Below are positions 19,438-57,900 of a stretch of 64,000 nt of DNA, in pieces (positions within the stretch are counted from its first letter, which is position 1; each line of letters begins with the position of its first letter). The position numbers and the translations under genes are program-made. The notes under the pieces are model-generated. The model made no database searches and was not told the DNA's origin. It saw nothing but the letters and a program-made list of their open reading frames with translations. Source of the DNA: Octopus sinensis (lineage: Eukaryota); the NCBI RefSeq assembly GCF_006345805.1, contig NC_043002.1:78926001-78990000 (forward strand), in the 5' to 3' direction.

Positions 19438-19470
<33 letters not shown>

Positions 19471-25207: not shown

Positions 25208-26662
25208 TTACTGTGATTTTAACACAGTTCCGTAAGAGATGTTATTGTAGAACAAATACTGTACTAACTGCCTACCCTACTTACAGAGTGTATACATTAT
25301 GCTACATAGATGGATATTTTCATTAAACGTAGCCTATACCAGATTTTAAATTCTAATATAAAAGTAAAATGCTGTTTTTTTTCTTTTCTTTTTTTTTTTT
25401 CTAAATTGTGAAGTATTTAATTTGAAACAGCCTACTTCTGAATAGATTTTATCGACTTTATCCATAACTTAAAAAATTTGTCCTTATATTTGTCTCAAAT
25501 AAATCAATAATTTGTAACAAATCAACTCTCAAATTTTATATTAAACTGTGTGGAATATATGATTGGTATTGATAAAAATCTCATTAGCAGTTTGCAGTAC
25601 AGAGTTCTTATAGATATAAGAAAATAGTTTGTTCATTGATTTTTGCCCTGATCCTATTTTGTATTTCCATACTTTTCAGAGTTCTGGACTAACACTTATC
25701 TCTGATATTAACCTGGAAACCCGACCATGCACTTGGCTACAAGCCCCAGTTGATCTTCCGAGTAAAGAAGCAACTGATGTGTTGTGTAAGTGATTTGTTT
25801 TGTATTTATTTTAGTTTAAGATTCATAATGGAAACTTCTATAAGTAAGAATAACTGTTTCTATTTCATAATCTTTTAGTGTTGTTTTATTTCAGGGGAGC
25901 AGTTTTATAATGTTCCTGAAACAACGACAACTGATACAAGTGTTGCAGAAGACGCTTTCATGCCAGAAGAAAGATTTGGAATATTAGATTACTTTTCAGA
26001 AACATGGTTATGGAAAGATCTAGAAACTAGGTAATTATTTTTTTTTTTTCCTTCTTTCTTCAAATTTTCTTCCATTTCTTGCTGAGTTTTTTCCCTACAC
26101 CTAGGGCAGAAAAGCTCATTGTATGCATTCCCAGATTACACACGCAAATTCATAGGTAAAATATGTATTTAAAAAATTAATAAATAAAAAATTCATGAAT
26201 GGATGTTGTTTTCACAGCGATAATGCTCTTCTCAGTACATGAGTCGTTCCAGTTAACACGATTTTTTGCACTTCCTGTAGGGATTGTAAGCCTGGTATCA
26301 TTTTCAAATAGGTTTCAGTAGCTTTTTTTTTATCATTCCTAGAGATCCTATAATCACTGGTACTGTAGTCGCCTTGAGATGCCACATTTTTTCAATTTCT
26401 ATTAGCAAGTCTTTATATTTACTGATCTTGTCAAATTCTTTTGACGCTATATTGTGATCGCAAGGAATATTCGTGTCAATTAATAAACACACCTTTTTTG
26501 TCTGATCTTTTATAATAATATCCGGTTTATTAGCTTTTATAGTTTTGTCAGTATGTACGGGGAAGTCCCAGAGAATCGACACATTTTCTCCCTCAGTCAC
26601 AGCTTCTGGATGGTGTTTATGCCATTTGTCAGTGGTTTTGATTTTATTATTAATTATCTTGA

Positions 26663-29700: not shown

Positions 29701-32700
29701 TGTGTGTCTGTGTTTGTCCCCTCCCACCATCACTTGACAACCGATGCTGGTGTGTTTACGTCCCCGTCATCTAGCGGTTCGGCAAAAAGAGACCGATAGA
29801 ATAAGTGCTGGGCTTACAAAGAATAAGTCCCGGGGTCAATTTGCTCGACTAAAGGTGGTGCTCCAGCATGGCCGCAGTCAAATGACTGAAACAAGTAAAA
29901 GAGTAAAAGATATATATATATATATATATATATACATACACATAATTTATAAAATGTAAAAAGAGGTAGTCAAAATTTTGAATAATATATTTATTTAGTG
30001 CTTTCATCTCGTTTCAGAGATTCATAAGCTGAATCACTGAAATGTGATGAAAGCGCTAAATAAATAATTATCCAAAATTCTGTCTACCTCCTTTTTCTTA
30101 ATATATAAAATTTGCACGCTACTTCAAACAATCTACACACACACACACGCACACCACTTGACAACCAGTGTTGGTATGTTTACATAATCATAACTTAGCA
30201 GTTTGGAAAAGAGATCGATAAAGTGAATACCAGGCTTAAAAAATAAATACTGGGGTTGGTTTTGTTCAACCAAACCGTTCAAGATGGTGCCCCAGCATGG
30301 CTGCAGTCTTATGACTGAAACAAATAAAAAATATAGGTGCAGGAGTGGCTGTGTGGTAAGTAGCTTGCTTACCAACCACATGATTCCGGGTTCAGTCCCA
30401 CTGTGGGGCACCTTGAGCAAGTGTCTTCTTCTATAGCCTTGGGCCAACCAAAGCCTTGTGAGTGGATTTGGTAGACGGAAACTGAAAGAAGCCGTTGTAT
30501 ATATGTATATGTGTGTATGTGTATGTTTGTCCACCCGACATCGCTTGACAACTGATGCTGGTGTGTTTACATCCCCGTAACTTAGCGGTTTGGCAAAAGA
30601 GACTGATAGAATAAGTACTAGGCTTACAAAGAATAAGTCCTGGGGTTAATGTGCTTGACTAAAGGCATTGTTCCAGCATGACTGCAGTCAAATGACTGAA
30701 ACAAGTAAAAGAGTTAAAAGAGTAAGGAGAGTAAAGGATAGTGAGTATTGTAAGTATGTCAAATTTTTTTAACTGTTCTTCAAAATTTTCTTTGCATCAT
30801 TCTAGAAAAAATGAAAAATTACTGCTGAAAACCAAAGTACCAAGCCCAGCAACAGAATGGATTGGGAATGTGTTCTGTTCCAGTGAAACTGATGGCCTTG
30901 GCTTGTTAGCTTTGCCTACCATTTCTGTCTTTCAACCATTTTCCATTTCTTATATAATGCCATACACTGGCATTGCTGGGGAAAAGATTCCTATAAGCAT
31001 AACTATACAATCGAATATCAAGAAATGCCTTACTGTAAGTATCCTTTTTGTTATATTTTCTTTCTTTTTCTTTTTTTTTTATTCTTCTGAAAAATACATT
31101 TCGTAGATTTGAAACATTTTCCCTACATTGTCAAGTTTTTGTTATTTTATTTATTAATTTTTTTAGTCTGTTAAGGATTTTGTCATCCCTCTTAAACATC
31201 TTAACATTCATCTTTTTATTAGATATTCAACAAATTCCAGCTCTCCTTGAAGAGACAACAAAAATAGTTTTTCTTTGTTTTTTTCTCTTTTACTCTATTG
31301 ACTAAATAATCTTATCATTGTTCTACTTCATATTCTTTACTCAATAAGCTGAACAATCTCAGCCATGTGTTTTACAGTTGTTATTGTTATCAGTTTTAGA
31401 TGTATGATGGAGAAATAGATTAGATGCTCATATATGAGTTTTTATCATAATTGATTAGTGGGGTCAGAAGTTTGTCTTCAACTGCAAGCATTGTGCCACG
31501 TTCTCAGGCAAGACACTTGTTTCAGTTTTCTTTACAGGATTCAAATTATCTGAAAAGATAGAAAATGCGAATTTTATTTTTCCATTGCATGTGATAAATG
31601 AAGATAATCTTTTCTACTCTAGGTACAAGACCCCATACTTTTGTGGAGGGGTGGGCAGTAGATTAGATCGACCCCAGTATGCAACTGGTACTTAATTTAT
31701 TGACCCCCAAAAGGATGAAAGGCAAAGTCGACCTCGGTGGAACTTGATGGTAAATGAAAATAATATTAGCGAAAATGAACATTATGTATTGCTGCCTTTG
31801 AAAGAATTTACCATCTAATTAATTATATTTATCACAGTACATAACAACTTGGAAGCAATTTGGATATGTACTGTGAGAAATATACAGACACAGACATACA
31901 TTACAGTATTTAATATGCTACACATTTGTATATAACATATCTATCATACCAGCAATGGAAAAAGCCTCTGTGTCAGTTTCACCAATCTCAGAGGGTCTAC
32001 AATAGCCATCAGCACAGCCTCTTCCTTTGTATCAAACCTTGACATTTTGATTAGCTTCTGATTTATGAACCTTCTGATTGGCTGATCTGAGTTTAGGAAC
32101 AAAATAATATTTTCACTAATATTTAGGAATCGGCAAAACAGCATTGATCTTCTGAGTCATGTGACAATATAAGTAAGAAATGAACAAAGAATATGATGTT
32201 CCTGTATCCTTTGATTTAGTAAAAGGTTTCCAATACAACCTGGAAATGTGGAATTCTAAAATGCCATAATGCTTTTGATACTATACAAAACTACCACTAG
32301 TTTTATGATACAAAACTATCCTAGTTTTAAAGTGTTTATATCTAAATTTAAGCCTTTCGTAATTTTATGTAAGAACATTTTAAGTTATGTTCTAATCACA
32401 AGTTTAACAGCAACAAAGTTTATTTTTCTAAATCCCTCCAAATTCTTGAGATTTTTTTCTGAATTAATTGAAACATATGAGGAGTGTATTTCATTAAAAG
32501 TGCAGCTATGAAAAGGATTAAGGACAGTGTTACAAAGCAACTTTAAAAATTTATAATAAAATATCTGAAAGATAGAATTTTTATTATGCAACTAGGGGTC
32601 CCCTTCTCTAATGTTTTATAGCATCAAGATAAATATTCCAGTCAAGTTCACCAACTATGTCTAGCTTGCAACTTGCATAAACATCTTTGGTAAGAGAAGC

Positions 32701-35700
32701 TGTAGTCAAAATAAATGTGATATCTGATCATCATATAGTTAAACTGTTGTACTCCTGATCATATGGTTGTGGGCTAAATTCTTGGGCCACATATGTTTTG
32801 TCCTTTGACTAGGCACTTTATATCACATTCCTCCAGTTCACATAGCTGAAAATGTGCTGTGCTTGTTGCATAGCAGCGTCTTGCAGTTATTAGACCCAAA
32901 TTTTGAAAATGCAAGATATCAGGATCCTTTGACTGTGACAATACACTAAATGAGAATGAAGACCAATGAATTACTCCAAACATTTGGTCAGTTCAGCTAC
33001 AATTATCTTATAAGTCTACTCAAGTAGTGCTAATTAGAAATACTCAAAAATAATAACCAGCGAACTAAATTTAATTAAAATTTTGTGCTGTAGTTGTATT
33101 TTACAGCAAAGCAAAGTCATCCAAGAGCCTTGGTCACTCACTCCAATGTGAAAATGATCAACCCCAGAGTAAAAGGGGATCTGACCTCACAGCAGAGCAA
33201 ATTTTCTTGTGCTTGCATCATGATAAAACACCATGAACTGTTTTAAATTCTCTTTGGCTAAGGGGTAAAGGTTATGACAGGCCTGACACATCACCTGGTT
33301 TATCAAGACCCTCTTGGTCCTTTGCATTCATTTAACACCAAAGGATCAAGAGGATCTTGATAAACTGGATCTTTAAGTATTTCCTTGGCTACATTTTCTT
33401 TCAGACATAGACAATTCAAATGTTTAGACTGGACATCAGCCGCATCGATCTCACTTGTCCGGAAAAACCTTCATAGGCCATGAACACTGCTCTATGCACA
33501 AACTAAACAAGAAAAAAATTAAGATTGATGACAACAATACTTCAGACCTGTCCTAAACTTGAATTGCTTATGTTTCTCACTTTAGCTGTCCATAAAAAAA
33601 AACTTTCTCAAAGACCAACAATGTTCCTTTGCTAAATGTTTATGTTCCATTCTGTTTATTCCTTTGATAGATAGGGTTACGAGTGAAGGTGTCAAGTAAC
33701 TCAGAAAAGACACCAAAAGAAATCAAAGGGCCAGTGTCTTGTCTCTGTAAAGAAGAATATATTACTACCAACATTTACTTAAATGACCTCCCCATTGGTG
33801 TAATTAATGTTACAGTACAGGTAAGCCCTTGTTTTGATTTATTTTTCAGCAGTGGAGAGGTTTGGTAGATAACTAAAAAAAAAATTGGGGGTTTTGCTTT
33901 TTTGAGACTTTTCCAACAGATATAAATGATTGTATGGTATACATACGAGGAGATGCAGAAAAGTTCCTAGCTTTAAGGGTATTGTGAAAGGCCTGGTTGA
34001 AGGCCCAACCTTCCAAGTTCTTTTATAGGGCTTAGAAAAACTGAAGGACTACTGCAATAAATGTGAGAATCTGAGAGGGAAATATGTTGAATAAAATCCT
34101 CCTGTATTTTCTGTTACCCAAAACAAGGAACTTTTCAGCATTCCCTTGTGTGTGTGTGTGTGTGCATGCGTGCACATGTGAGTGTATGCACATATATTTT
34201 TAGCAGTTAACAAACAGGTAAATGACTTTTGATGAAGGTTTCCCTATATTTCATATTTTAACAAGTAATATATGCATTTATATGGATGTAAATGTGTATA
34301 AGTGCATGCACATATGTGCCTATTTATAACAGTTAATAAGTTCATTGCATACAGTGCTCAGGTGTACTAAAATTCATTGGCAAAAGTAAAAGAGGTGATT
34401 AAAAGCTGCAATAAGTCAAGTAAAGAAAGGAAAACAGCAATAATAGCTAAAAGTATATGCATAGTACACCAGATAAGACACAAGACAAAAATTAAACAGT
34501 GAAAGAGCCTTAAAGAGGAAAAGATACATAAGCATGCTAGATGTTGGCAAATTTCAGAAAGCATAGAATTTTTAAGGGATATAGTATTCTAACTGCTAAC
34601 AATGGTTGTGGTATTTTGTTCCATGCTTTAACAATTCTGATTGTGAAAACTGTTTCTGTAAGTTAATGGTGCTACATTGTTTTTGGTTTTAATTCATAAT
34701 TTTCACAAACACTTTTTAATTTGTATGTGGGTGGGAATTGGCTCCCAAGAATAAATGTAACAACTTTTTTTCTAGAGATCTCCATTCTCTTGATCAACCA
34801 CTTCAGTGGAGTTGGCATAGTAACTGCCTCCAAGTCTGTTTTACCTGTCTCCAAGTCCACCTTGCCTGCATCCAAGCCCAAATTGCTGTTTCCAAGTCCA
34901 TCTTGCCTTCCAGCATCATCAATCATACAAAAATAGATTGTACAGTACAGAGAATATATATCTATATTGTGACACTATATCTCATTCAACTGATCACTGC
35001 ATGTCAAAGTGTTTAGAATATATCTCAACTAGAGAGAAGTATGGTGTAGCCGAAACAACAGAGTTATGGAGTCAGAATTCATCATTAGGTGTATTACTTG
35101 TTTACCACATTTGTTTTGGCAGAGTTGAAATGGAGCTACACAACAACAACTAAAACAGCTATAGATATCTTCTATGTAGCACTCTAATATCATAAAATAT
35201 CATTGAATTTGGAAAGACATGTGTATAATTTCCCATAACTACAGAAAAGCTTTTACTGAAATATGACTCACTAACGTTTCTGGACTTTTCACCTAAAAAA
35301 AATAAGGATTTAATTTGTAATCATATCCTAACCCACAACTTAGATTAACACAATTACCTGATCCTTTGGTGCCTTTAGTAGAATGCACTTTACTGTAAAC
35401 ATTCAAATTTGATCCACAGTTGTTTCTCCATGTCCATGTTTTCCTGCAGGTAATCATCATCATCATCATCGTTTAACGTCCGTTTTCTGTGCTAGAACGG
35501 GTTGGACGGTTCGACCGGGGATCTGGGAAGCCAGAAGGCTGCACCAGACTCCAGTCTGATCTGGCAGTGTTTCTACAGCTGGATGCCCTTCCTAACACCA
35601 ACCACTCCGTGAGTGTAGTGGGTGCTTTTTACGTGCCACCTGCTCAGGTGCCAGGCGAGGCTGGCAACGGCCACTATCGGATTGGTGCATTTTACGTGCC

Positions 35701-38700
35701 ACCGGCATGGAAGCCAGTCAAGGTGGCGCTGGCATCGGCCACGATTCGGATGGTGCTTTTTACATGCCACCGGCACAGAAGCCAGTCAAGGCAGCGCTGG
35801 CATCGGTCACGATTCGGATGGTGCTTTTTACATGCCACCGGCACAGAAGCCAGTCAAGGCAGCGCTGGCATCGGTCACGATTCGGATGGTGCTTTTTACG
35901 TGCCACTGGCACAGGGATCACAACTGCAGTTTCCATTGATTTTGATGTTGGTGTACTTGACTCAATGGATCTCCTCAAGCACAGGGTCGAAATGGTAAGA
36001 ATTAGTTGTATCAAATTCACTACTCTGAGAGAATCTAAAAAAGATTATAGGCATTGCCCCTACCTTCTGACTAACTTAGGAAACATTGTTTTTATCTGAG
36101 GTTCCCTATTCAAAAGATATGAATAACATGATATATTTTCGTCTAAACACTTTGTTTGCAGGGTAAATCTATTTTGCCTAATAATAGAAGATGTAGTAAA
36201 AAGACTGTTGATTCTCGTTATATTGGAATGATTGATTCCAGCTCTGCTTTCATCAATATGAGGGTAAGTAATATTAATGTCTTATAATTTGTTGATTTTT
36301 TTCACCACTCACTTCAAAACCAAAAATCAAGTTTTTTTTTCTATTTTTGTAATTTAAATAGAGGATTACTTACTCATTTTTACTATATATCTGGTACCAA
36401 TTTTACATGAAGTTTTTTTAATCTTATTTTTTCTTCATTTCTTCAGCCAAAAGGTTTCTTACAAGAAATTACTCACTCCGAATACGTCTGTCCTTCAGGT
36501 ATGTTTATTCTAATAACTCGTAAAATATCTACTCTTGGTAGAGTAACTGATAAATTTGATCCCCAGTACTTGACTAGACCTTCTTTGATCCTGTAATTCC
36601 AAAAAGAATTGGAGAATCAAATAAACCCTAGTCAAGCTGACTTTCATAAGATATAAATTTAGAATATAAAGAAATATAAGTGAATTCTGCATGTTCATTT
36701 ATAGCTCACCTGGTTCAGCTTGCTGCTGTTTTCACCCTCTAATCCAACAGGTAATCATAGGAGCCCATCTTGGCTCTCTGTGCTCTAGATTCAGTGCTAG
36801 ATTAACTGTTAAACAAAATAAGCATTTGCTTAGAGCATCAAAGAAAAGGGGACACCATAGAAATGGTAAATGGTTTATGGCACAAAAGAAATCACTTCAA
36901 ACTTGCTAAAATAATATTCAAAGTGGTTTGTATGATCAGAAATATAATTTCAAAGTGTTTATGGTGTCATTGTGAGAAGCTGATCCAAGAATTTGAATTT
37001 TAAAAAGTAGAAAATTTTTCAAATATTAATGAAGTGGAAGTAGGCAAAAAAAATTATATTTATTTTATGGTTTATTATTGTTTATATTTTCAATTACATA
37101 TATATGGGAGCACCAAAATCTTTTAAGTGATTAAGGCCTCAATGGGTCTTAATCCAGCCCTGTTTAGACCAACAAACAAGCTGAACCTACTTCTTATAGA
37201 CCCTGGCTAGAAGGATAAGGAAAGGGTATCAAAAATCAGGCCAATGGGTGAATTATATTCAGCTAACACACATGCTGTATTTCATTAAGTTGTATGTATT
37301 AATTCATTGAAAATCATTAACTGAAACAGATTTTTGTTTGTTTGAATGTTTGTTCATTTAGCATTCATTTTTCTATACTAGCATGAATTGGATAGGGATG
37401 CATTTGTGGCCAGATGCTCTTCCTGTTGCCAACCTTACTTGTTTTTCAAGTAAAGGATTTCTTTATTCCACAGCTCTTTGAAAGTTCAGGATAACCAGTT
37501 GTAATCATCAATGAGGAATGTAAACACCATTCACTGTTTTATTGAAGTAAAAGCCTTGGGATGTTAACTTTCATTTGCATTCACACACACGTACACACAC
37601 ACACACACATTTTGATCCACTACATTGTCATTGAAAATAATTTTTTATGCACTGGATTGAATTAAGTAGTATGAAGAAGCATGCCAAAGTTATTGTTGTT
37701 TCTTCTCTTTATATATTTTGGTTTGAACATTAATAATTTTTGTGAAATTCCTCACATATAGCCTCTAAGATGTTCTGTCTTTTGTCTGTTGCATTGGCCT
37801 TCCTAGATATTAAGCCGGTATTTCAGATGTTTCCATGATGCTTTAAACAATTTTTGTATTGCACTCCAAGTTTACCAACAATTCTTTAGCCACTGTTTAT
37901 GACACCATACAAAACAACCTTGAACAGAGACTTGCAAACAGCTTGCCCATCCAAGTGCTGTGTCAATAGAAGGCTCCACATTCCAGATGCCAGTAGGTTT
38001 CAGTAGTCATCAGGATAGAATGCTACTGTTTCAGGAGCCTCCTCTTGATAATTCTACAGTTCACTAGCTCCCTTCACTGATGTGAGACCCCTACCTACTG
38101 GACCAACTGACTAGTATTCAATCTTAATTCCTTCAACCCAGGATTATCAACACCATTCCAAATGATCCTTACAACAGTTATGTTTGTTCTAGATATATGT
38201 ATAAATCCGTAATCTGAACAAGAAGCACATATTTTTCTAAGCATATTTATATTTTAAAAAAAGTTTGTAAAAGATTTATTTTAATTTGTTAAAGATTTTT
38301 TTATTCTTTTTCCCTCTAATTTCAGAGGATCATGGTGGAAATTATGTTAATATCCTTTCAACTGAACTACCAAAAGATACAGTCCCTGGAAGTGTGAAAG
38401 CAGAAATCAACATGTTTGGTAATAAATTTGGGTATCTTTATACTTTTTCTTCCTTTTTCAGTTTGTAATTTTTAGAAATGCTATCCAAATATTAATTTGT
38501 TTCAACTACACTTATTTAAAATATTGGTAATTATTGACACTTCATTTTCAGCATTAAATTATCTTATTGCCATTCTCTATTTAAAACTTCATGAATTATT
38601 TGGTTCAAACTTAACAAAACTAAACAACTTAACCAACAACTTTAATGACATTTTATTTCATTAACAATCCAGTAATGGAAATTAATGGGGAGGAAGGTAT

Positions 38701-40370
38701 ATGGTGAGTAGCTACTCCTCAATTTTTTTTTTTAATGAAATTCAGCCTCAAACATAAAACTGGGGTACAACTGTAATACTTAGGAGAATTCCAAAAGAAT
38801 TCTACAAGTGAAATTACTAGATGTGTTGAATCTAATGGTTCAGGCCCTTACTCTTCATCTGAGAGTGAAGAAGATTTGATGTTGTCATTTTTGTTGTGAG
38901 GAAAGTAGAATGGAGTTTCCCTTAAGGCTGCAAGGTGGTAGAATCCTTACTGCACTGGACAAAATGCTTAGCAGCATTTCTTCTGACTTTATGTTCTGAG
39001 TTCAAACACCACCTGGGTTGACTTTGCCTTTCATCCTTTCAAGGTTGATAAAATAAGTACCAGTTGAGCACTGGGGTTAGTGTAGTCAACTTACTCCCTC
39101 CCATGACATTGCTGGCTTTGTATCAAAATTTGAAACTATTATGTATTTACCGGATTCATCTCCATTCCCCTTTCTGTGAAGGGGAATCATTTTTCAAATA
39201 CTTAGATAAGTTCAAAAGAAATGGAAGTAGAGAGACGTGTCACTGAAGGGATTACAACAATGTGATGAAATAATTATTTGACAAAAAATAAGAAATGACA
39301 ACACAAACAATAATGAACATTTGAACTATTGATTAACTGCTTGACCAAAGTGTTTAGCATATGAGTTAGAAAAATTAGTAAAAAAAACAGCTGATCGATA
39401 AATTTGTTAGTGTAGTAACTAACCCATTATCTAACAATAGCAAAAGGGCCGAACATGTGCGTGTGTTTATTACCAGCATAATGCCCCTCTCAAGATTCAA
39501 TAGTATTTCTTTCAACATACGAATTCACATCAAGAATCTTGCAAACCAAATACAAATATGAAATACTTAGATGTTTCAGATCAAACATGTTGGAAAGACT
39601 AGAGTTAATATAAAGCCTGAACAACTTCAGTTTATCACTTTGTGTAGCTGAAACAGAGGAAGAATTCTTAATGAAGTACTTAATGTACTGTGTGATATGG
39701 AGCTTGGTTGATAAGACAAAGTGTAGCAGAAGATTAGAAAGACAAGTACATACAGTTTTAAGTGGGAGAAGTGTACAACCGATAAGCATTAGCCTCTTCA
39801 TTTTAAATTACATATACTCCAGTTTGATGGTTGGCTGTTGAAGGATAAGAAGGGTGGCTTTACAAAGACCTAAATAATCCAAAAATGTATGACATCTAAG
39901 TTTCTTTGTATAGAAAAATTATATTTACAACAGTTGTTGTATAGATTTATATAAATTTCTCCTATGTTTTACAATGAAAAATCTGACGTGATTTTGTTAT
40001 ATGATTTAATGGCACCTCATATTTTCTGTGCAATTCTAGGTAATATGTTATGGCCTGGGTTATCATCTCTAGAAAATATAGTGAATGATCCTATCACAAA
40101 TGGAGAAGGAAACATCCTGAGCTTGGCTGCTACCATTTTCGTCATGGATTTCTTGAATGCTGTTGGAAAAGTTTCTTATGAAATTGAAATGAAAGCAATA
40201 GAAATAATGGAAAAATGTATGACCAGAATTTAATTTCATTCTTTACATTGTAGTTTTGATTGCGTTGGTGTTTTTAAATGCACATAAGTAAAACAAAAAA
40301 AAAGCCTTAGGTAACTGGTAGGAGTCTGAGAGGGTAAAACATTTGAACACAAGACTCCCATCTGTATTTC

Positions 40371-40401
<31 letters not shown>

Positions 40402-42378
40402 ATTTTATAAGAGATACCACCACACTGAAAATAATAGTCAAAACTTGACTCTAAAACTACATTAAATGTTCATACAGCACCAGGAGACAAGACAAAGAGA
40501 CAAAATAAATTAGCAAAAAAATTACTGGATAATTCCAGATCCTGGATTTCTGGCTTTGCATAAGAGATGCTCTGCCTTCATCAGTGGTATACACTCAGAT
40601 AGTACATAAATACAAATATATATACATACAACACACGACATACTTACATATACAAACGTATAATCATACATATATATGCACATACATACATGACCAGTTT
40701 AAACTGCCTGCCTTAAAGCTCCTCTTGCGATATGGTCAGAATAAACACTGCAGTGAATATAATGACGAAATAAATATATAAATTTTTATATATATATATA
40801 TAAAATGGGCTTTCACATTTCCAACAGGCCTGTCACTGGTTCTCTGCATTACTTGTAAATGAGTACCTCAAAGACATGTCTGTAACTTGGTGCAGAACAA
40901 CAAATATCTTAAAGGATCTTGTTCAAAGAGTACTTTTTTTTTCCTGCACTGTTGTTTACATCCTTCCCTAATATACCTCAGCAAAAACACACACACACAC
41001 ACACAGTTATGGGACAAACTGTAAGAAATTGTATATTTGTTACTGTGACCATTCAAGATCTAAATTGTTAGTTGTTTAAGCAATAATCATTACAGGTGCT
41101 TAAAAAATAGCTTAAGCTATTATAATTGTAAGCTGCAATTGAATATTTTTTCTATATTTGTTAATAATGATTATTATCTATTCCTAAAGTTTTAAACTAA
41201 TTATTGAATCATTCATTTATTTATACATTTATTTTCTTCAACAGGTTATCAACAACAAATGAATTACATTCATAAAGACGGTTCTTTTAGTATATTTGGC
41301 TCACAAGACAGAGATGGTAGTGAACTCTTAACTGCATTTGTCCTCAGAATTCTCGTGAAAGCTCGATCATACATTTATGTTGATGAGGTGCAACTTCAGA
41401 AATCCATATCCTGGCTAAGAGATCAACAGCTCGAAAATGGTTGCTTTTATGATAAACTGAATTATTCATTGACATTTGGACTTTATGAAGATAGGAAAAA
41501 TATGGAAAGAATTAGTACTGCATTTGTGATTATGGCATTACTAGAATTTGGCACACCACAGCATGTATGTTTTATTTATTTCTCTCCTCATTCGTTTATA
41601 CACAAGATTTTCACTCTATATTTCATTTATGGAGACCATGTAATCATTTAATTATTTATTTATTTATTATATTGACATTGCTGATATTGTTTAGCCCAGG
41701 GATAGTTTTCATTGAACGGATCTATGTTCAGATATATTCCTGTATTAACCATCATCAAGACTTACTTTATAGTTCCCTATTTCCTTTTTTTATGATGATA
41801 AGATGTGATTTTATGTGGATTTAGATTCTATTTTTTGCACATTGAATAACTACTTTCATTCATTCATTCAATCTGCTCTGAATGAATGAATAGTTTGACT
41901 CAGTTGAAGTTTCACAAATGCAGATATATATATCATCATCATCATAATCATCATCGTTTAACGTCCGTTCTCCATGCTAGCATGGGTTGGACGGTTCGAC
42001 CGGGGATCTGGGAAGCCAGAAGGCTGCACCAGGCTCCAGTCTGATCTGGCAATGTTTCTACAGCTTGATGCCCTTCCTAACGCCAACCACTTCGTGAGTG
42101 TAGTGGGTGCTTTTTACGTGCCACCCGCACAGGTGCCAGGCGAGGCTGGCAACGGCCACGGTCGGATTGGTGCAATTTACGTGCCACCGGCACGGAAGCC
42201 AGTCGAGGTGGCGCTGGCATCAGCCACGATTCGGATGGTGCTTTTTACGTACCACCAGTCCAGGGGTCCTGGCATCTGCCAGGTGCTAGTCATAGGATTG
42301 GTTCAATTTCGATTTCGATTTCACTTGCCTCAACATGTCTTCGCAAGCAAAGGGGGTTGGCATGGGTGCCTGTCGTCG

Positions 42379-42418
<40 letters not shown>

Positions 42419-45209: not shown

Positions 45210-48200
45210 GAAGTCTAAAGAAGCATTTCAAGGTTCATCAAGGTCAGACACCACAAGCAGTTCAAGTTGCACCAAGACTGGTGTGCAATTTGTGTAGACA
45301 TCTTTTTAAAAGTATATCTGGTTTAAAAAGCCACATGAAATCTCATACCAGAATTGAGCTTCATGTACACTAAGATGGTCAAGCTCTGTATTGAGCAAAT
45401 CTATAAAATTAGCTTCATTAGCTTTCTTAATAATGAGAGGATGATTTATAAGTTATTAACACCAAAGTATGCCCTGCTTACTTTAAGAAAATGCTTAAAT
45501 GAATGCAAGTGCTTGTAATTCTGCATTTGGTAGGGAAGAAGTTAAGGATAATTAGGTTATACAGCAACCATTGGTGTTATCTTCTAAATCTGCAGTTCCT
45601 AAACTTATATTGTTGCAGAGTTCAAGTATTTTTTGGACAACACATGCCAACCTAATTTTAAAAAACATTTAAATGAAAAGGAGAATTTGTTCATATAAAA
45701 ACATATGTAATACAGCATAAAAGACACATAACAGCATTTCAAAAGCATACAAAATTTGTTAACTTGACATCAATTAATAAACATTTAAGTGAAGTTAACA
45801 GTTTTGGTGTTTTTGAATGGTTAGTATGTCTTTCATGCTGTAATTGTCAAAGTTTCAACACAGCCTCAGATCAAATCACTTGCTAGGCAAGTACATCTCC
45901 AAAAAAAAACATATAACTTATCATTTGTAAGATGGTGCTTACTTTATGAAATCGTCATTGTCATCATCATTTAACGTCCATTTTCCTTGGTGCCATGGGT
46001 TGAACAGCTTGACCACTGCTTTGTCCCCTGATAATTTCTGCTAGGTAATTGTTAGTACCTTGACAAGTATTGGTCCTCCATGTTTTATGTGTTCTGGATG
46101 GGATGTTATTCACTCTTGGAGATTTCCTGTCTTTGAGCATGTATACTATCTCTTCAATTTCCTCCTGGAGAATTGGAGTCTCCCCAAGTTCTCTGTTGTT
46201 GTTGGAATTGTCCAGGATGTTGCTGTTATGTTTGTGTTTGAGATTGTATGCATGACAGAGAACAGAGACCAGTGGTGATGACTGACTGCAAAAGCATCTA
46301 GAATGGCACCCCAATGACTTGCTGCATTAGTTAAGGAATCTTTATGATGATGAAACATGTTTAGCACCATGGTGAAGAAAGATGAATTATATGGATCCAA
46401 ATGTTCTTCTGTCTTGTTAATGAAGGAGGGAAAGAGGGCAAATATGTCATTTTTTATAAGATCTACCTAGTGTTTCTGTTTGAGAAGCTCTAGCCTAGAG
46501 AGTAGACATGGAAATATTTATGAAAAATTCAATTGTAATATTTAACTCTTTATTAAATTTTAGGACCTGATCATTGATAAAGGGCTTAACTGTCTCCGAT
46601 CCCATGATTATGAAGACATATACATGTTATCACTCTATGCCTATGTCTTTACTCTGTATGGCCATGCTGAAGCTGATAAGGAAAAATATCAGAATGTCCT
46701 TGAGAGAAGATCAAAGGTTTTAGGTAATATTTCCTTTTTTTAAATATTCCTTTTATTTATTCATGTATTTATTAATATTTCCAAAGATTTTTATCAGCAT
46801 CATATGAAATGAACTTAGTTACTGTTCAGGTCATTTTCCTGAGTCACAATCTCATCCTTATATGCCAGTCCATTGCAAGGTAACCTATTCACAGCTGAGT
46901 GAACTGGAGCAATAGGAAATGCAGTGTTTTGCTCAAGAGCACAATGCACAGCCAGTTTGAGAATTGAAGCCATAATCTCATGATTGTGAGTGCAACACCC
47001 TAACCACCAGGCCCACATTTTCTTATGCAAATACACGTATTCTTTATGAATTTTGTTCTCATTCTCTTACTAATAAAATGGAACTGGTGTCTAATAAACT
47101 ATTCACTATTCATAATAATTATTCTGCTGAGATCAAGTTTGCCTTTCATCCTTTCAGGGGTTGATAAAATAAGCACCAGTTGCATACTGGGGTTCATGTA
47201 ATTGATTTGCCCCTCCCCCAAAATTGCTGGCCTTGTGCCAAAATTTGAAACCAATATTTATAAAAGTTTATTTATCTAAAATGTTTCCCCAAACAATTTC
47301 ATTTATATCATGACATCTAAGTTATTAAACATAGATTTCATATTAATCTGATGCAAGTATTATTTACACAAATATGACACATCTATTATTACCTCAGCTG
47401 AAAACTTGCTTACAAGTCCTATTTGCAAAAGTTATTTTGCATTAGGCACAGGAATATGATAAAGCAGTTTTGCATTGCCACTACATATGGTTCCAGATTT
47501 GATCTCATTTTGTGTACCTTTGGAAAGTGTCTTCTATCATAGCTTTATCTTGTAGAATTCATCACATGATAGCTGTTTATGCAAAAGCTCATCATATATG
47601 TAGTTTCATCATTGGTTTTATATCTACTTTACCATGCTGGCATAGGTTGGATGGAACATTTTCGAGGTAGTTTTTTTATAACTGGATACTCTCTTTGACA
47701 CCTATAATTTTAGTTGTCTTTAACCCTTTAGCAAATATTTTACTTGTTTCATGTTCATGCTGGCCAGATCTGGCTTCTTGCACCAACCCTACAATGTCAT
47801 TTTAAAAATAAACAATCACAAATCTCAAAGCGACAAAATATTACATGATTAATTCAAGACAATGTGAATAAATAAGCATTACATTTGACAGATTAATCTG
47901 AATGCTAAAGGGTTAATGATATGCTGAGATATGAGCTACCTATTCTAAAACTCAGGATACACACAATGTGTGTTTTGCCAATGTATATCAGCAAAGGATA
48001 TACACATTGGCAAAGCAAAAACAAAAACCTGGTGCTTTACAAATGAAGTCCCTTGAGTTATTTCTTCTGTTAACCCTCTCGATACCAACCCTGCTGAAAT
48101 GACCTCTGGTTCTGTAGTACAGGTCTTATTTTCATAAGTTTTGAATTAGAATCTTCCACCAAACCTTAGTCACAATTTATGTTCCTAACACTAGCTTAAT

Positions 48201-51900: not shown

Positions 51901-54900
51901 TTTTGACTTTAAGAGCCCTCCTAGCATGAGGCATTTATGTATATAATGCCTTAATATAAATATCTATATCTATCTGCGTGTGTGTGTGTGCGTGCGTGAG
52001 AGAGAGAGAGACACACACACATACAACAGGCTTCTACACAGTTTCCATATATCAAAATCACTCACAAGGCATTAGTCAGAGAAGGACTCTAGTTGAAGTC
52101 ATTGGCCCAAGGAGTTGTGCAGTGGGACTGAACTCAAAACCACAAGGTTGCAAAACAAGCTTCTTAACCACACAACTATGCCTGTGCCCTATTTATTTAT
52201 ATTATTTATTATTTATTTATTTATTCATTTATTTTACAGGGGAAGAAACATTTTGGTTGAATTCAGAAGACTCCAATTCTATAACATCTATGGACATTGA
52301 AGCAACATCTTATGCTTTGCTCTCTCTTTTGGGAACGGAAGCCACCAGCAAATGGCAAGATTTGAGACCAGTTATCAGGTGGCTTACCAAACAACGGAAA
52401 CCTATGGGAGGATTTATGGCTGCAAAGGTTTTTATTATCTTTTTTTAAACTCCTCAGTTTCTTTTAAGTTATGTGTGTGTGTGTGTGTGTGTGTATACGT
52501 GCATGTGTTGGACAGTTTGACCAGGGCTGGTAAGCTTTCCCTGAAGAGATGCTGGTGCAAGGTTTCCGCCCCGACATCTGAAACCCGGAGTTTTATCATG
52601 GCAACTGAATAATTGTCATCATATTATATTACAAATATATATATATATATATATAAATGGCGGTGCCTAGCATGGCCACAGCTTGTGAACTAAGACTGAT
52701 TCAATTCAATTCATATAAATGAATGATCATCATGGCTATTCCAATCTCTGCTGATTTCCCCGACAATGTAATATAGCCTCCACTTGATGTACTGAGTACT
52801 GTACTTTAGTTGAGAATCCTTCTGTTTCTAATGGAATTACCTACAATCTAAAATCTTTTAATATTTCAGGATTCAGTTATAGCATTTCAAGCCATTTCCC
52901 AGTATGCACTGATGTGGTCAGAGCGACAGGAACCAGCAGATATAACCATTTATATTGACAATGAATATGACCCAACAGAGACCTTTCAACTCACTAACCA
53001 AAACCAGTTTGAATTGTTCACTTATTCAAAGCCATTTAAGAACAAGATTCGGATTGATGCTGAAGGCAGAGGTTGTGGTATCATTCAGGTAAACCTTTCT
53101 TTATTCGTATCCAAACAGTGAATGTAAATATATAAACATTTGAAGTATCAATATTTTATGCTCTATATATATGCTTGCATATATACACACATGCATACAT
53201 ACATAGATACATACACACTTGCTTACATACATACATTATATAATATATATTATATATTTATACATGCTACTTACTTACTTACTTACCTACATACATCTTA
53301 TACATGCATACATACATGCTTACATCATACATACATCATACATATTCATACATGCATACAACATACATGCTTACATATTTACATACAACATACATGCTAC
53401 ATACATACATGCTTACATACATACTTGCATAAATATTTGAAAAAATAAATCCTCACCAAAATCAAGTTGGTCTAACCATATTAATATTCTCTGTATCTTT
53501 TTTTCTTATACATTTTAAGACTTCCTTGACATACAATGTTCTTAATCTAAAACAAGAACAGAGCTTCCATTTGCGTGTATCAGTGGAAAATACTTACAAT
53601 AACTGTGCTGAAAGGAAGCTGAAAATCTGCAGTCGGTTAGTGTTGGTTTACTTATTTCTTATTTTGTTGATTTTCGTTTTTCTTTTTAAATATCACTTTA
53701 AGATTACAGAGATGTACTTGCATAGCAAGTGACCTGACCTGATCTGAGATTGTCTGCTGGAACGAAAACAATTACAGCGTGGAATTTTTAAGTGAAACCA
53801 GCGTGCAATAGTTTAAGATTAGTTATATCATTAGGGTGTTGGACAAAATGTCTTGCAGTATTTATTATGGCCTTCTATATTTCAGAATTCAAATCCTGGC
53901 AAAATCAACTTAGCTTTCATCCTTCTAGGGTTACAACTAAATCCACTTTACAATTTGTCACAAAAAGCATGTCCTTGTGCCAATATTAGAAAACATTATT
54001 CTTTTCTAATCTAGGCACAAGGCCAGAAATTTTGAGGGGAGGGGACCAGTTGATTAGATCGACCCCTGTATACAACTGGTGCTTAATTTATCAGCCCCGA
54101 AAGGATGAAAGGCAAAATCGACCTTGAAGGAATTTGAACTCAGAATGTAATGATGAACAAAATGCTGCTAAGCATTTCATCCAGCATGCTAATGTTTCTG
54201 CCAGTTCACTGCCTTTTAGAAAATTCTTTTCTACTCTAGGCACAAGGCCTGAAATTTTGGGGGAGGCAGCTAGTCTATTAGATCGACCCCAGTATGCAAC
54301 TGGTATATAATTTATCGACCCCAAAAGGATGAAAGGCAAAGTTGACCTTGGGAGAATTTGAACTCAGAACGTAAAGACAAGTGTGCTAACATTTCTGCCA
54401 GCTCACCACCTTATTAGAGAACCTTATTATAGATTTCCTATATATACTGCTCTCAACTAAATGTTAGTTGAAATCAACTTCCCCCATCCGTGCTCAGAAA
54501 TTGCTGACCTTGTACCAAACATTTGAAATCATTATTATCTCTGCCTTAGCAAAGGCGGAGGTTTTATTTTCAGTCATGTTTGCTTGTTTGTTTGTCCATG
54601 GACAAGATATCTCAAGAACCGCTGGGTAAATTCAGATGAAACTTTCAGGGATGTTCGGCCCCATGACTGATTAGATTTTGGGATCAATCTGGTACCAGAC
54701 AAGGATTCTGGATTATTTTTCCAGTTTTTTATACTTAATTTTTGAGAGCAATCGGGTTCATTTTTAGTATTCTCGTTTGTGAGAGCAGTCGAGTATATTT
54801 CAGGTATTCTCATTTTAAAAATCATCTCCAGCTAATCATTGAGAGGATGTTGGTGTTGCCTTGGCGGAGGTTTGCGCTCTCTGAGTGCTCTTGTTATTAT

Positions 54901-57900
54901 TGTCTTTACTGCTACTACTACTTTATTAGCCATTAAAAAAAGCATCAACTACAATGGAATGTTCTGCTTGAAAAGCTAAACTTTTTATCTTCCTTACAAC
55001 AAACCTATTTATTCCACTTTCGGAATTGTTTATACTCTCTTATTCCTGATACATATTACAAGTTTCATCATTTGAAGAACTTAATATTTTTGGAAGCAGC
55101 ATGAATACCACACCATCATATTTCCCAATTATCTGTATCTTTAATTTTTTAATGTTTAATTATCAAATTGTTGTTTATTTCTAATAGTTACACAGGGAGG
55201 AGTGAAAAGACAAATATTGTTATAATGGAAGTGAAAATGCTAACAGGTTGGATCCCACAGCAAATTGTTGATGTGAGTCGCTTTATTATATCTTTGCTTT
55301 TTCACTGACTTCAGGTGCTAGACTGTGGCTATGCTGGAGCACCACAAAGTTTTACTTGACCATGTAGTCAGAAATTTGCTTTCCAACCACATGGTTCAAG
55401 GTTCAGTTCCACTGCATGGCACTCTCAACAAGTTTCTTCTAATTTAGTCTCAGGCTAACCAAATCCTTGTGTGTAGATTTGATTGAGGGAAAACTGAAAG
55501 AAGCCTGTCATATATGTATTAGGTCATCCCATAAATAATGCATTTTTTTTTATATTTCTTTTATTTTTCGAAATTAAGATAAACAAAGTTCTTTTTTAAT
55601 CTAAAATATACTCTCCTTCATCTTCTACAATTCTCTTCCAAATATCTGGTAGACTTGCAAGGCCCCTCTTCCAAAATTCACTTATCCGTGATGAAAAATA
55701 CTCCTCCAGTGCTGTTATGACCTAGTCTACAGAATTCATGTTTTCTCCATCCAAAAAATTTTGAAGACCACAGAATAAATGATAATCAGATGGAGCAACA
55801 TCCAGCAAATATGGTGGGTGGGGCATCGTTTCCTATTCAAACCGCTCCAGCTTTTGGAATGTCATCCTTGCTGTATGTGAATGAGCATTATCCTAATGGA
55901 AAAATATTTTTCATCTTGAAACCAAAGATGGTCATTTTCCTTCTAGCACTGGCTTGAATGACTTGTTGAATGACCAAATCCAAACTTCTCTGCTAATTCC
56001 TCAACACTTATAATGGGATTTTGTTCCACCAGCGTTTGCAGGACATCCTTGTCGAACTCTACAGATCTTCCAGGATGAGGCTTGTCTTCTAGGCTTAGTT
56101 TCCCACTCAGAATTTCCGAACCACTGTTGACACTGGCTTACACTTATTATCTGATCCCCATATACTACATTAATATTCCTCATACTTTCCATTGTGTTGT
56201 TACCATTCTTGAACTCATAAAGCAAAATATGCCAAATATGTTCCTTTGTCACTTCCATTATAGCTTTGGAAAAATAACTGTTAAAATTGAACTACACTCT
56301 TCAAAACTTGCACTAAGAATAAGGACAAGGTAAAATTACTACCTGCTTTTATAGCAAGTTGATGCAGGTAGTTTATCCCATCCCCCTCTGACCTTTAGTT
56401 CATGCAGGTGGAAAAAACCTCATTACTTATGGAATGACCCAATATATATATGTATACATTTTTGTGTTTGTCCCCCATCACCGCCACTTCACAACCAGTG
56501 CTGGTTTGTTTACATCCCTGTAACTTAGTGCTTTGGCAAAACAAGACTAATAAAATACATACCAGGCTTAGAAAAAAATGGGGCTGATTTGTTCAACTAA
56601 ACACTTCAAGGTTGTGCCCTAGTATGGCCACAATCTGATTGAAAGAAGTAAGATAAAAGATGAAAGTCATACATACATACACACACACATACACACAACC
56701 ACCCAATCCTGAGAAATTAAGCTTCTCAAAACCAGAAGGGTGTAAAACTAATCCGAAGACCACAGATCCAATCCATCACTGGAACTATAAAAATTTGTCA
56801 AATTTTCCAGAAGTTTATCATTTAAATATATATGAGCATGTCTAGATATGAAGCTATATACATGAGAATACATTCATAAAGCAAAACATACAAACCTGCA
56901 CATATACATGCATGCATGCATGCATACATACATACATACATACATACATACAAACAAAAATACCCTGTTGCTGATGCTGAAAGTCCAATGAAGGAGCCTT
57001 AAATCTAGATTAGAAACCAGCTCTTTCTCTGTTGGCAAGAAATCTTGAAATAAAACTGGACAAGGACATGCATACATGTATGTATGGGTTAACTGAAAGT
57101 AGTACCTGTGATGTATTGGGGACAATTTAAATGTCTTTACCTCTTGACTGTAAATGTATCATCTTGTGTCAATATCAGAAATCACTATTATCTATTTGCT
57201 TAAGACAACGCACAGGTGGAATCATTAGCACGCTGAGAAAAACGCTTAGTGGCATTTCATCTGTCTTCGTGTTTTGAGTTCAAATTCCACCAAGATCAAC
57301 TTTGTCTTTCATCCTTCTGAAGTCGAGAAAATAAATAGCAGTTGAACACTGGAATCAATATAATCAACTGATCCCTCCTCCGAAATTGCTGGCCTTATGC
57401 AAAAATTTGAAACCAGTATTATCTATTTGCTTATGAGATATTGTAAGATGAGTTGTCAGAAGTGAGTGAGTGTTGGAATAAACACCTCACTCCTTTATGT
57501 TCCGAGTTCAAGTCTTATCTACATAGACTTTTCCATTCATCCCTCACAAAATAAGTACCAGTAATATATTGTAAACAATTGAATGTATTATAATGGACAC
57601 ACCAGCCCTAGAACTGTTGTCCAAGTGCAGAGACAAAATAAATTAATTATTTCTACTCTAGGCACAAGGTCTTGAAAACTTTGGGAGAAGGGGGCTAGTC
57701 GATTACATCAACCCCAGTGCATAACTGGTACTTATTTCATTGACCCTGGAAGGATGACAGACAAAGTCAACCTCAATGGAATTTTAACTCAGAACGTAGC
57801 AGCAGATGATATACCGCTAAGCATTTCGCCCAGCATGCTAACAATTCTGCCAGCTCCTCACCTTTGAGACAAAACAAAATAAATTAATATTTACTGCTTA

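What the first reader, a model, noticed from the sequence alone, without database searches (positions are those of the whole stretch)
40090..40113. Intact A2M-type TEP gene whose thioester motif is completely erased (GCGEQ replaced by TNGEG)
Seen: the thioester position reads P-I-T-N-G-E-G-N (CCT ATC ACA AAT GGA GAA GGA AAC). The surrounding spacing is preserved: [29 protein letters not shown] versus the canonical L.NLL.MPYGCGEQNM..FAPNI.V..YL. Both the Cys and the Gln are replaced by multi-nucleotide changes, while all 27 exons stay open with canonical splice sites. Established: the Cys-Gln thioester gives A2M, C3, C4 and insect TEPs their covalent capture chemistry. Thioester-less members exist elsewhere (C5, Drosophila Mcr/Tep6). 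Inference: this is a maintained, repurposed non-covalent A2M paralogue in a cephalopod, for example a pure cage trap, a carrier, or a structural or signalling protein. Its linker ([25 protein letters not shown]) is of the invertebrate A2M type, and I see no anaphylatoxin domain.
Basis: partly seen in the sequence, partly recalled or inferred. Interest (0 to 1): 0.82.

Follow-up and report, generated by a model that had tools for sequence, protein, structure and literature searches.

The report
Octopod alpha-macroglobulin without its thioester
This is a real octopod alpha-2-macroglobulin-type gene that lost its covalent "thioester" warhead long ago and has been kept under strong selection since, which adds a cephalopod lineage to the known thioester-less members of this immune protein family.

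Summary
Window 40090-40113 reads P-I-T-N-G-E-G-N inside a clean exon (40040-40216). It aligns exactly to the (M)P(Y)GCGEQN thioester site of A2M and A2ML1.

The window holds 26 GT-AG exons, not 27. They form one open frame of 1282 codons, running from MG3 to the receptor-binding domain. They are a gene fragment: both gene ends lie outside the window.

A full-length orthologue exists in Argonauta hians (GAB1607259.1, "murinoglobulin-1-like", 1757 aa). Its exon sizes match in 24 of 26 cases, it is 83.8% identical, and it has the same TNGEG. Pairwise dN/dS is 0.075 (dS about 1.2). The ex-thioester exon is among the most constrained (0.018).

A third, more distant genome (57% identity) keeps [12 protein letters not shown] unchanged, with six synonymous and no amino-acid differences. 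This is the longest invariant block in the TED region.

No alternative GCGEQ exon exists in any of the three loci. A. hians also has a canonical GCGEQ paralogue.

The gene is therefore an old, selectively maintained, non-covalent A2M-class paralogue. It is not MCR, C3 or CD109. Thioester loss recurs in this family (ovostatin, MCR, C5, snail TEPs, spider and mantis-shrimp A2Ms), so novelty is moderate. Its function is untested.

The parts
40090..40113 (+). Former thioester site, reads PITNGEGN where canonical proteins have P(Y/T)GCGEQN
   Evidence: Identical amino acids in A. hians and in L002.
40087..40122 (+). [12 protein letters not shown], the longest block invariant across three genomes in the TED region
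   Evidence: a 12-residue run; the next longest is 9. Six synonymous and no non-synonymous differences against L002.
7473..7590 (+). Exon 1 in the window (equals A. hians coding exon 9 of my list; end of MG2/MG3 region)
   Evidence: AG/GT; 118 nt, the same size as in A. hians.
9763..9875 (+). Exon 2
   Evidence: AG/GT; 113 nt, as in A. hians.
11456..11629 (+). Exon 3 (hit to Pfam MG4)
13017..13229 (+). Exon 4
13772..14003 (+). Exon 5, containing a Lys/His-rich stretch that does not align to human A2M
14107..14279 (+). Exon 6 (A2M_BRD region)
   Evidence: 173 nt against 176 nt in A. hians.
14876..15022 (+). Exon 7 (A2M_BRD region)
16920..17031 (+). Exon 8 (start of the linker / bait-region domain); omega 0.027
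20845..20912 (+). Exon 9, with the dibasic site HRKKR|V at 20847-20864 and YVDAMFAFK; omega 0.012
   Evidence: HRRKRV in A. hians; basic clusters at the same alignment position in Ischnura, Bacillus, Solemya and Ptychodera A2Ms.
25680..25785 (+). Exon 10 ([17 protein letters not shown]... bait-type region)
25895..26030 (+). Exon 11 (end of the bait-type region, ...[12 protein letters not shown])
30806..31034 (+). Exon 12 (Pfam A2M domain)
33671..33820 (+). Exon 13
36162..36263 (+). Exon 14
36447..36498 (+). Exon 15 (52 nt)
38326..38418 (+). Exon 16
40040..40216 (+). Exon 17, the ex-thioester exon (start of TED); omega 0.018
41245..41564 (+). Exon 18 (TED); 91% identical to A. hians
46564..46723 (+). 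Exon 19 (TED)
52240..52427 (+). Exon 20 (TED)
52870..53088 (+). Exon 21 (end of TED)
53520..53635 (+). Exon 22
55188..55272 (+). Exon 23 (A2M_recep)
57951..58025 (+). Exon 24 (A2M_recep)
58957..59056 (+). Exon 25 (A2M_recep, ...VVVYDYYDR)
61771..61959 (+). Exon 26, the last one found in the window. It probably splices on at AAAG|gt to exons beyond the window.
   Evidence: 82.5% nucleotide identity to A. hians exon 81920-82096, which is followed by four more coding exons.

Best explanation
What it is. The window carries the central 26 exons of an alpha-2-macroglobulin-class gene of an incirrate octopod. The orthologue is the Argonauta hians 'murinoglobulin-1-like' gene. The species of the window is inferred to be another octopod genus.

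Shown here.
- The Cys and Gln that form the internal thioester are gone (TNGEG instead of GCGEQ).
- The loss is old. It is shared with A. hians and with a third genome only 57% identical.
- Since then the gene has been under strong purifying selection.
- The replaced loop [12 protein letters not shown] is the most conserved block of the TED region.
- The rest of the A2M machine is kept: MG domains, a bait-region domain with a conserved dibasic RKKR site, TED and the receptor-binding domain.
- A canonical GCGEQ paralogue coexists in the A. hians genome.

Inferred mechanism.
- The protein is made as an ordinary alpha-macroglobulin, probably cut into two chains at RKKR.
- It acts without covalent capture.
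- The conserved ex-thioester loop most likely serves as a structural latch at the buried TED / receptor-binding-domain interface, holding the native 'loaded' conformation.
- Cleavage in the bait-type region would then trigger the usual rearrangement.
- The target would be held sterically, as in ovostatin. This requires an oligomeric cage.
- Because the bait-type region is conserved rather than hypervariable, the target is more likely one specific, probably endogenous, protease or ligand than a broad range of pathogen proteases.
For: Motif and alignment.

Gene model. 26 AG/GT exons give one open frame of 1282 codons, against 76 and 134 stops in the other frames.

Domains and relatives.
- Pfam finds TED 4e-60, A2M_BRD, A2M, MG4 and A2M_recep.
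- The best solved relatives are A2ML1 at 1.9e-106 and A2M at 8.8e-103, ahead of CD109 at 2.7e-78, TEP1 at 6e-54 and C3 at about 1e-38.

Orthologue. P0028 is GAB1607259.1 from A. hians. Its locus was fetched and mapped exon by exon, and 24 of 26 exon sizes are identical.

Selection. Identity is 83.8%, dN 0.092, dS 1.23 and omega 0.075. The thioester exon has omega 0.018. The motif differs from A. hians only at synonymous sites.

Third genome. L002 has [12 protein letters not shown] with 6 synonymous and 0 non-synonymous differences, and this is the longest invariant run.

No alternative exon. No GCGEQ-like sequence occurs in six frames of the window, L001 or L002.

Canonical paralogue. A. hians P0123 has MPYGCGEQNM.

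Dibasic site. It is conserved in the window and in A. hians, and basic clusters sit at the same alignment position in other invertebrate A2Ms.

Literature.
- Tetrameric alpha-macroglobulins, including ovostatins, inhibit without covalent linkage, while monomers and dimers need it (PMC7864068).
- Chicken and human ovostatins lack CXEQ (bioRxiv 10.1101/2021.09.22.461418).
Against: - No expression or protein evidence was obtainable. No spliced transcript fragment turned up in the protein collections, though that index also missed the known orthologue.
- The oligomeric state is unknown. From memory, the purified Octopus vulgaris alpha-macroglobulin is a dimer, and dimers normally need the thioester to inhibit.
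- The bait-type region is 79% identical between the two octopods, which is unlike a broad-spectrum bait.
- The TED is only 30-34% identical to canonical A2Ms, whereas mussel and fish A2Ms are 43-45% identical to each other. The function may therefore have shifted well away from protease trapping.
- Gene ends are missing from the window, so integrity of this particular copy is shown only for residues of about 276-1553.
- dS is near saturation, so omega is approximate.
Confidence: 0.72

Rival explanations
1. Same gene, different mechanism. It is no longer a protease trap. It is instead a binding, opsonin-like or structural protein, as Drosophila Mcr is in septate junctions and Candida binding, or as C5 is after specific cleavage. 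The conserved TNGEG loop and linker would be part of a specific interaction surface.
For: - The linker and bait-type exons are among the most conserved (omega 0.012-0.056) instead of hypervariable.
- There is a long stem branch and low identity to canonical A2Ms.
- Thioester-less TEPs with non-trapping roles are documented (PMC7016707; PMC1310651, listed).
- Non-tetrameric alpha-macroglobulins need the thioester to inhibit.
Against: The full trap architecture, including the receptor-binding domain, is retained under selection. There is no LDLa or transmembrane segment as in MCR. No partner or localisation data exist.
Confidence: 0.3
2. It is a decaying or incipient pseudogene, or the TNGEG reading is a sequencing or assembly error.
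For: Loss of the family's defining chemistry. The gene ends cannot be checked in this window.
Against: The same motif occurs in two other independent assemblies. Omega is 0.075 with dS 1.2. There are no stops in 1282 codons. All 52 splice dinucleotides are canonical.
Confidence: 0.02
3. A functional thioester is supplied by an alternative (mutually exclusive) exon, so the protein can still be covalent.
For: Alternative splicing of variable regions is known in snail and arthropod TEPs (PMC7016707). A. hians has partial tandem copies of the 5' end of this exon.
Against: No G[CS]GE[QN]/CGEQ-like peptide occurs in any frame of the window, of the 88-kb A. hians locus or of L002. Sensitive tblastn with three homologous thioester exons hits only 40040-40216. 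The A. hians partial copies stop before the motif.
Confidence: 0.02
4. It belongs to an already described thioester-less class (MCR, or C3-like as BgC3-1 and BgC3-3, or CD109/iTEP) rather than to the A2M class.
For: Mutated thioester sites are typical of MCR and of some mollusc C3-like proteins. The A. hians orthologue has an extra C-terminal six-Cys domain that I could not name.
Against: No LDLa, ANATO, NTR or Kazal hit appears in the window protein or the orthologue. There is no C-terminal hydrophobic helix in the orthologue. Scores are far better to A2ML1 and A2M than to CD109, TEP1 or C3. The nearest named relatives are all A2M-like, and the same C-terminal domain occurs in GCGEQ-bearing arthropod A2Ms.
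Confidence: 0.05

Closest known systems
Ovostatin / ovomacroglobulin (chicken; human OVOS1/2)
   Same: An A2M-class protein with the full trap architecture but no CXEQ thioester. It is the known model for purely steric, non-covalent trapping by a tetramer.
   Different: The loss is independent. The octopod gene groups with invertebrate A2Ms and is at most 30% identical to anything outside cephalopods. Its oligomeric state and inhibitory activity are unknown, and its replacement motif (TNGEG) is itself strongly conserved.
Canonical cephalopod alpha-macroglobulin (A. hians GAB1609825.1 'pregnancy zone protein-like'; the Octopus vulgaris haemolymph alpha-macroglobulin)
   Same: Same genome lineage and same domain plan.
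   Different: The canonical paralogue keeps MPYGCGEQNM and is only 25-30% identical to the TNGEG gene, so the duplication is ancient.
MCR (macroglobulin complement-related; Drosophila Mcr/TEP6, BgMCR1/2)
   Same: A TEP with a mutated thioester that is nevertheless functional.
   Different: MCR is defined by an LDLa domain in place of the bait region and by a C-terminal transmembrane helix. Neither is present here.
Other mollusc TEPs with mutated sites (Biomphalaria BgC3-1, BgC3-3, BgTEP3)
   Same: They show that 5 of 11 TEPs in one snail lack a working CGEQ, so the phenomenon is common in molluscs.
   Different: Those are C3-like or iTEP-class genes. In that snail the single A2M keeps its thioester.
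Independent losses in other invertebrate A2M-class genes (Parasteatoda 'alpha-1-macroglobulin' QGGEL; Oratosquilla 'ovostatin-like' GNGEH; Saccostrea 'CD109-like' ETGEE)
   Same: Same class, same site, and the G-E core is kept while Cys and Gln are lost.
   Different: They are different lineages with different replacement residues. None has been studied functionally, as far as the searched literature shows.
Complement C5
   Same: A thioester-less family member that still works through proteolytic activation and conformational change.
   Different: C5 has anaphylatoxin and C345C domains, and its similarity is far weaker (E about 6e-21).

Membership tests
Alpha-2-macroglobulin class of the TEP superfamily | Domain order MG domains, bait-region domain, A2M, TED, receptor-binding domain | tested here: met
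   Pfam hits on the window protein and on the orthologue, which also has MG2 and MG3. The alignment to A2ML1 and A2M is collinear over about 930 residues.
Alpha-2-macroglobulin class of the TEP superfamily | Internal Cys-Gln thioester motif (G)CGEQ | tested here: not met
   TNGEG in the window, A. hians and L002. By contrast, 96 of 101 representative relatives have GCGEQ.
Alpha-2-macroglobulin class of the TEP superfamily | Bait-type linker instead of an anaphylatoxin or LDLa domain | tested here: met
   No ANATO or LDLa hit. The linker has only two Cys and matches the invertebrate A2M pattern YVDxxxAF...LETRPC.
Alpha-2-macroglobulin class of the TEP superfamily | Closest relatives are A2M-class proteins | tested here: met
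   PDB ranking; named nearest relatives; crude NJ tree without support values.
Alpha-2-macroglobulin class of the TEP superfamily | Protease trapping after bait cleavage | not testable with these tools
   Needs protein biochemistry.
MCR (macroglobulin complement-related) | LDLa domain in place of the bait region | tested here: not met
   No Ldl_recept_a hit at E<=0.01 (window protein) or E<=10 (orthologue).
MCR (macroglobulin complement-related) | C-terminal transmembrane helix | tested here: not met
   The orthologue's C-terminus is read directly. It is charged and Cys-containing, with no hydrophobic 20-mer. This region is off the window for this copy.
MCR (macroglobulin complement-related) | Mutated thioester | tested here: met
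Complement C3/C4/C5 | Anaphylatoxin domain (six Cys) in the linker | tested here: not met
Complement C3/C4/C5 | C-terminal C345C/NTR domain | tested here: inconclusive
   This region is not in the window. The orthologue has a C-terminal six-Cys domain that looked NTR-like to me from memory, but Pfam gives no NTR hit at E<=10. The same domain is present in GCGEQ-bearing arthropod A2M-like proteins.
CD109 / iTEP | Closest similarity to CD109/TEP1, shorter length, GPI signal or C-terminal Cys signature | tested here: not met
   CD109 at 2.7e-78 and TEP1 at 6e-54 are clearly weaker than A2ML1 at 1.9e-106. The orthologue is 1757 aa. A GPI signal was not tested.
Ovostatin (vertebrate thioester-less tetramer) | Orthology to vertebrate ovostatin | tested here: not met
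   The nearest relatives are invertebrate A2Ms, so the loss is independent.
Ovostatin (vertebrate thioester-less tetramer) | Tetrameric, non-covalent trapping | not testable with these tools
   Needs SEC-MALS or cryo-EM and inhibition assays.

The most novel reading that the evidence does not exclude
The invariant [12 protein letters not shown] loop is not just a scar. It could be a new functional centre that replaced the thioester. One possibility is an Asn-Gly-based latent reactive site, such as succinimide or isopeptide chemistry. Another is a specific latch whose release couples cleavage at the conserved linker to a new, lineage-specific binding activity in coleoid cephalopods.
Probability: 0.08. 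Interest if true: 0.75.

Novelty: new member of a known kind. Interest (0 to 1): 0.4.

Why it matters
Thioester loss is usually read as loss of function, or is only noted in gene catalogues. Here the former thioester loop is the most conserved block of the domain across three cephalopod genomes, and a canonical paralogue coexists with it in A. hians. That makes it a clean natural experiment on what an alpha-macroglobulin does without covalent capture. It also gives a concrete candidate for biochemical work on cephalopod humoral immunity, which is poorly characterised. The finding does not reveal a new kind of system.

Tried and rejected
- The search for homologous proteins with a spliced TED query returned only relatives at or below 33% identity and at most 676 aa. 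It missed the orthologue that a later search found, so its silence on cephalopods or transcripts means little.
I used the single largest exon instead, and that search found the orthologue.
- tblastn with distant homologues was too insensitive for exon finding. The first exon starts at 7473, not 7510. The ORF end at 62012 was rejected as the terminus in favour of the donor at 61959.
- I searched for the missing N- and C-terminal exons in the window by tblastn and blastn and found nothing.
- My impression that the orthologue's C-terminal domain is NTR/C345C was not supported by Pfam, so I dropped it as a claim.
- The Rfam scan of the window found nothing.
- A literature search for the run and assembly accessions of L002-L004 gave no species.
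- Literature searches for a described thioester-less cephalopod A2M found none.
- I did not attempt structure prediction.
Full report
**1. The observation**

Window 40090-40113 reads CCT ATC ACA AAT GGA GAA GGA AAC, which translates to P-I-T-N-G-E-G-N. It sits in an exon bounded by AG (40038-40039) and GT (40217-40218), that is 40040-40216.

When the spliced protein is compared with solved structures, HMMER puts '[10 protein letters not shown]' over 'qmpsgcgeqn' of human A2ML1 and 'qmpygcgeqn' of human A2M. These lie within collinear alignments of about 930 residues, with E-values of 1.9e-106 and 8.8e-103. A MAFFT alignment with fish, mussel and metagenomic relatives gives the same column.

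Three of the five motif residues are replaced: Gly to Thr, Cys to Asn, and Gln to Gly. Each change needs at least two nucleotide substitutions. The Pro before the motif, the central Gly-Glu and the following Asn are retained. The reactive pair is therefore gone, but the loop scaffold is not 'completely erased'.

**2. The gene model**

I built a plus-strand model from open segments and splice sites. I then corrected it against an orthologue (see section 3).

The window contains 26 exons, from 7473-7590 to 61771-61959. Every one has AG/GT boundaries. Together they give 3847 nt and 1282 codons without a stop. The other two frames of the same spliced sequence carry 76 and 134 stops.

Pfam finds MG4, A2M_BRD, A2M, TED_complement (4e-60, covering positions 16-312 of 312) and A2M_recep. 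It finds no anaphylatoxin, NTR, LDLa or Kazal domain. The ranking against solved structures is A2ML1, then A2M, then CD109 (2.7e-78), TEP1 (6e-54), C3 (about 1e-38) and C5 (6e-21).

**3. The orthologue and the limits of the window**

A whole-library HMMER search with the largest exon (41247-41564) found P0028. It is 1757 aa long and 91% identical over that exon. It is GAB1607259.1, 'murinoglobulin-1-like isoform X1' of Argonauta hians, an octopod. It reads [23 protein letters not shown] at the same place.

I fetched its locus (L001, GCA_054771915.1) and mapped the protein exactly onto 38 coding exons, plus a first exon carrying Met-Lys. The 26 window exons correspond one-to-one to exons 9-34 of that list. 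Exon sizes are identical in 24 cases. The two exceptions are 173 against 176 nt, and 189 against 177 nt.

Neither tblastn nor blastn finds A. hians exons 1-8 or 35-38 in the window. The window therefore holds only residues of about 276-1553 of a protein of about 1750 residues. The in-frame stop at 62010-62012 is probably intronic, because a good donor (AAAG|gt) follows 61959.

**4. Is it maintained?**

Window against A. hians gives 83.8% amino-acid identity over 1277 aligned codons. The Nei-Gojobori estimates are dN = 0.092, dS = 1.23 and omega = 0.075. dS is near saturation, so omega is approximate. The contrast between dN and dS is nevertheless unambiguous.

By exon, the lowest omegas are:
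- 20845-20912: 0.012
- 40040-40216, the ex-thioester exon: 0.018 (dN 0.037)
- 16920-17031: 0.027

Within PITNGEGN the two octopods differ only at two synonymous sites.

A third genome gives further evidence. This is L002, contig ctg120398l of ENA assembly ERZ21867824. Its species is unknown, and it was found through the exon fragment P0029. It carries the same gene at 57% identity to the window and 55% to A. hians over 382 aligned residues.

Its thioester exon reads [44 protein letters not shown]. The twelve codons of [12 protein letters not shown] show six synonymous and no non-synonymous differences from the window. This is the longest block invariant among the three sequences in the TED region. 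The next longest block, YQQQMNYIH, has nine residues.

L002 is either a distant orthologue, perhaps from a decapodiform, or an old paralogue. Either way, the loss predates that split.

**5. Alternative exons and artefacts**

No G[CS]GE[QN]/CGEQ-like peptide occurs in any of the six frames of the window, of the 88-kb A. hians locus or of L002. Sensitive tblastn with the thioester exons of three homologues hits only 40040-40216. Three independent assemblies agree on the motif, so a sequencing error is excluded.

**6. Classification**

The nearest named full-length relatives are all invertebrate A2M-like proteins at 25-30% identity. They come from:
- Molluscs: Bulinus, Solemya, Haliotis, Elysia, Plakobranchus, Argopecten
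- Arthropods: Ischnura, Bacillus rossius, Tachypleus, Dermacentor
- Hemichordates: Ptychodera

The linker ...[27 protein letters not shown] matches their shared pattern. The dibasic HRKKR|V site (HRRKRV in A. hians) coincides with basic clusters in the Ischnura, Bacillus, Solemya and Ptychodera proteins. This suggests two-chain processing, as reported for tick alpha-macroglobulin (from my own knowledge).

MCR is excluded. There is no LDLa domain and no transmembrane end in the orthologue (definition from PMC7016707). C3-like is excluded by the absence of an anaphylatoxin domain.

A. hians also has a canonical paralogue, GAB1609825.1 'pregnancy zone protein-like', with MPYGCGEQNM. It is only 25-30% identical to the TNGEG gene.

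In the TED the octopod protein is 30-34% identical to canonical A2Ms. Mussel and fish A2Ms are 43-45% identical to each other. A crude NJ tree shows a long stem leading to a short window / A. hians pair. The pattern is fast change early and tight constraint since.

**7. How it most likely works**

Shown: the covalent chemistry cannot exist, the remainder of the machine is conserved, and the former warhead loop is the most constrained element.

Established knowledge: in native alpha-macroglobulins and C3 the thioester loop is buried at the interface between the TED and the receptor-binding/MG8 domain. Tetrameric alpha-macroglobulins and ovostatins inhibit without covalent linkage, whereas monomeric and dimeric ones need it (PMC7864068). 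Ovostatins lack CXEQ.

Inference: the loop now acts as a structural latch that keeps the native conformation, and the protein works by steric, non-covalent capture after cleavage of its linker or bait region. This would require an oligomeric cage.

The linker and bait exons are conserved (omega 0.012-0.056, with about 79% identity in the bait-type stretch). I therefore think a specific, possibly endogenous, protease or ligand is a more likely target than a broad spectrum of pathogen proteases.

The main rival is that the protein has left protease inhibition altogether, as Mcr and C5 have, and that the conserved loop is a binding surface. I cannot separate the two readings with sequence alone.

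**8. Novelty**

Thioester loss is common in this family:
- Ovostatin, C5 and MCR all lack a working thioester.
- Five of eleven Biomphalaria TEPs have a mutated site.
- Among the 101 representative relatives covering the site here, there are independent losses in a spider alpha-1-macroglobulin (QGGEL), a mantis-shrimp 'ovostatin-like' protein (GNGEH) and an oyster CD109-like protein (ETGEE).

The gene is already in public databases under an automatic name. I found no paper describing a thioester-less cephalopod A2M.

It is therefore a new member of a known kind. Its one uncommon feature is that the replacement motif itself is under very strong constraint.

**9. Not done or not possible**

I obtained no expression evidence, oligomeric state, species identity for L002, supported phylogeny or structure model. 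The steps needed are listed under decisive next steps.

Noticed in passing
window 20847-20864: A conserved dibasic, furin-type site HRKKR|V lies in the linker exon (HRRKRV in A. hians). Basic clusters sit at the same alignment position in dragonfly, stick-insect, bivalve and acorn-worm A2M-like proteins. This suggests two-chain processing.
   Followed up: partly
window 13880-14003 and 14107-14130: A stretch of about 70 residues, including the Lys/His-rich [24 protein letters not shown], does not align to human A2M or A2ML1. It falls in the gap between the two HMMER domains. It is present in A. hians, more diverged.
   Followed up: no
L001 69028-69143 (A. hians): Two partial tandem copies of the first 12-16 codons of the thioester exon ([12 protein letters not shown]..., ...NIVN) lie just upstream of the real exon at 69165. 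They are absent from the window.
   Followed up: partly
P0028 residues about 1640-1757 (A. hians orthologue; off window): A C-terminal domain with six conserved Cys (CPxC...FC...CxC...C) follows a Ser/Thr-rich linker. It is shared with Ischnura, Bacillus rossius and Tachypleus-like A2Ms. Pfam has no match, so the NTR-like resemblance rests only on my memory.
   Followed up: partly
window 860-1279 (-) and 56004-56291 (-): Remnants of Mos1/mariner-type transposases (Pfam HTH_48, E about 1e-15). One lies upstream of the first in-window exon and one in an intron.
   Followed up: partly
window 4758-6099 (-): Open segments of a retroelement. The 5447-5797 segment hits RVT_1 just below the Pfam cut-off (27.6 against 29.6 bits).
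   Followed up: partly
window ~9092, 20973, 29528, 30364 (+): Four copies of a short interspersed repeat whose translation reads [22 protein letters not shown], each next to TA/CA microsatellites. It was not classified, and Rfam found nothing in the window.
   Followed up: no
window ~1522-1822, 6467-6860, 19003-19587, 28306-28734, 35413-36096, 41886-42498, 63300-63700: Copies of a longer repeat with internal tandem units (translations such as ...AFYVPPAQ...GWCFL...), with long spurious ORFs in several frames, scattered through the introns.
   Followed up: no
window introns 14004-14106, 25786-25894, 36264-36446: Three very short introns (103, 109 and 183 nt) occur among introns of 0.4-5.5 kb. 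The corresponding A. hians introns are about 1.5 kb, 112 nt and about 1.0 kb, so only the middle one (25786-25894) is short there too.
   Followed up: partly
P0123 (A. hians GAB1609825.1): A canonical A2M-class paralogue with MPYGCGEQNM exists in the same octopod genome on another contig. The covalent function is therefore presumably retained elsewhere.
   Followed up: partly
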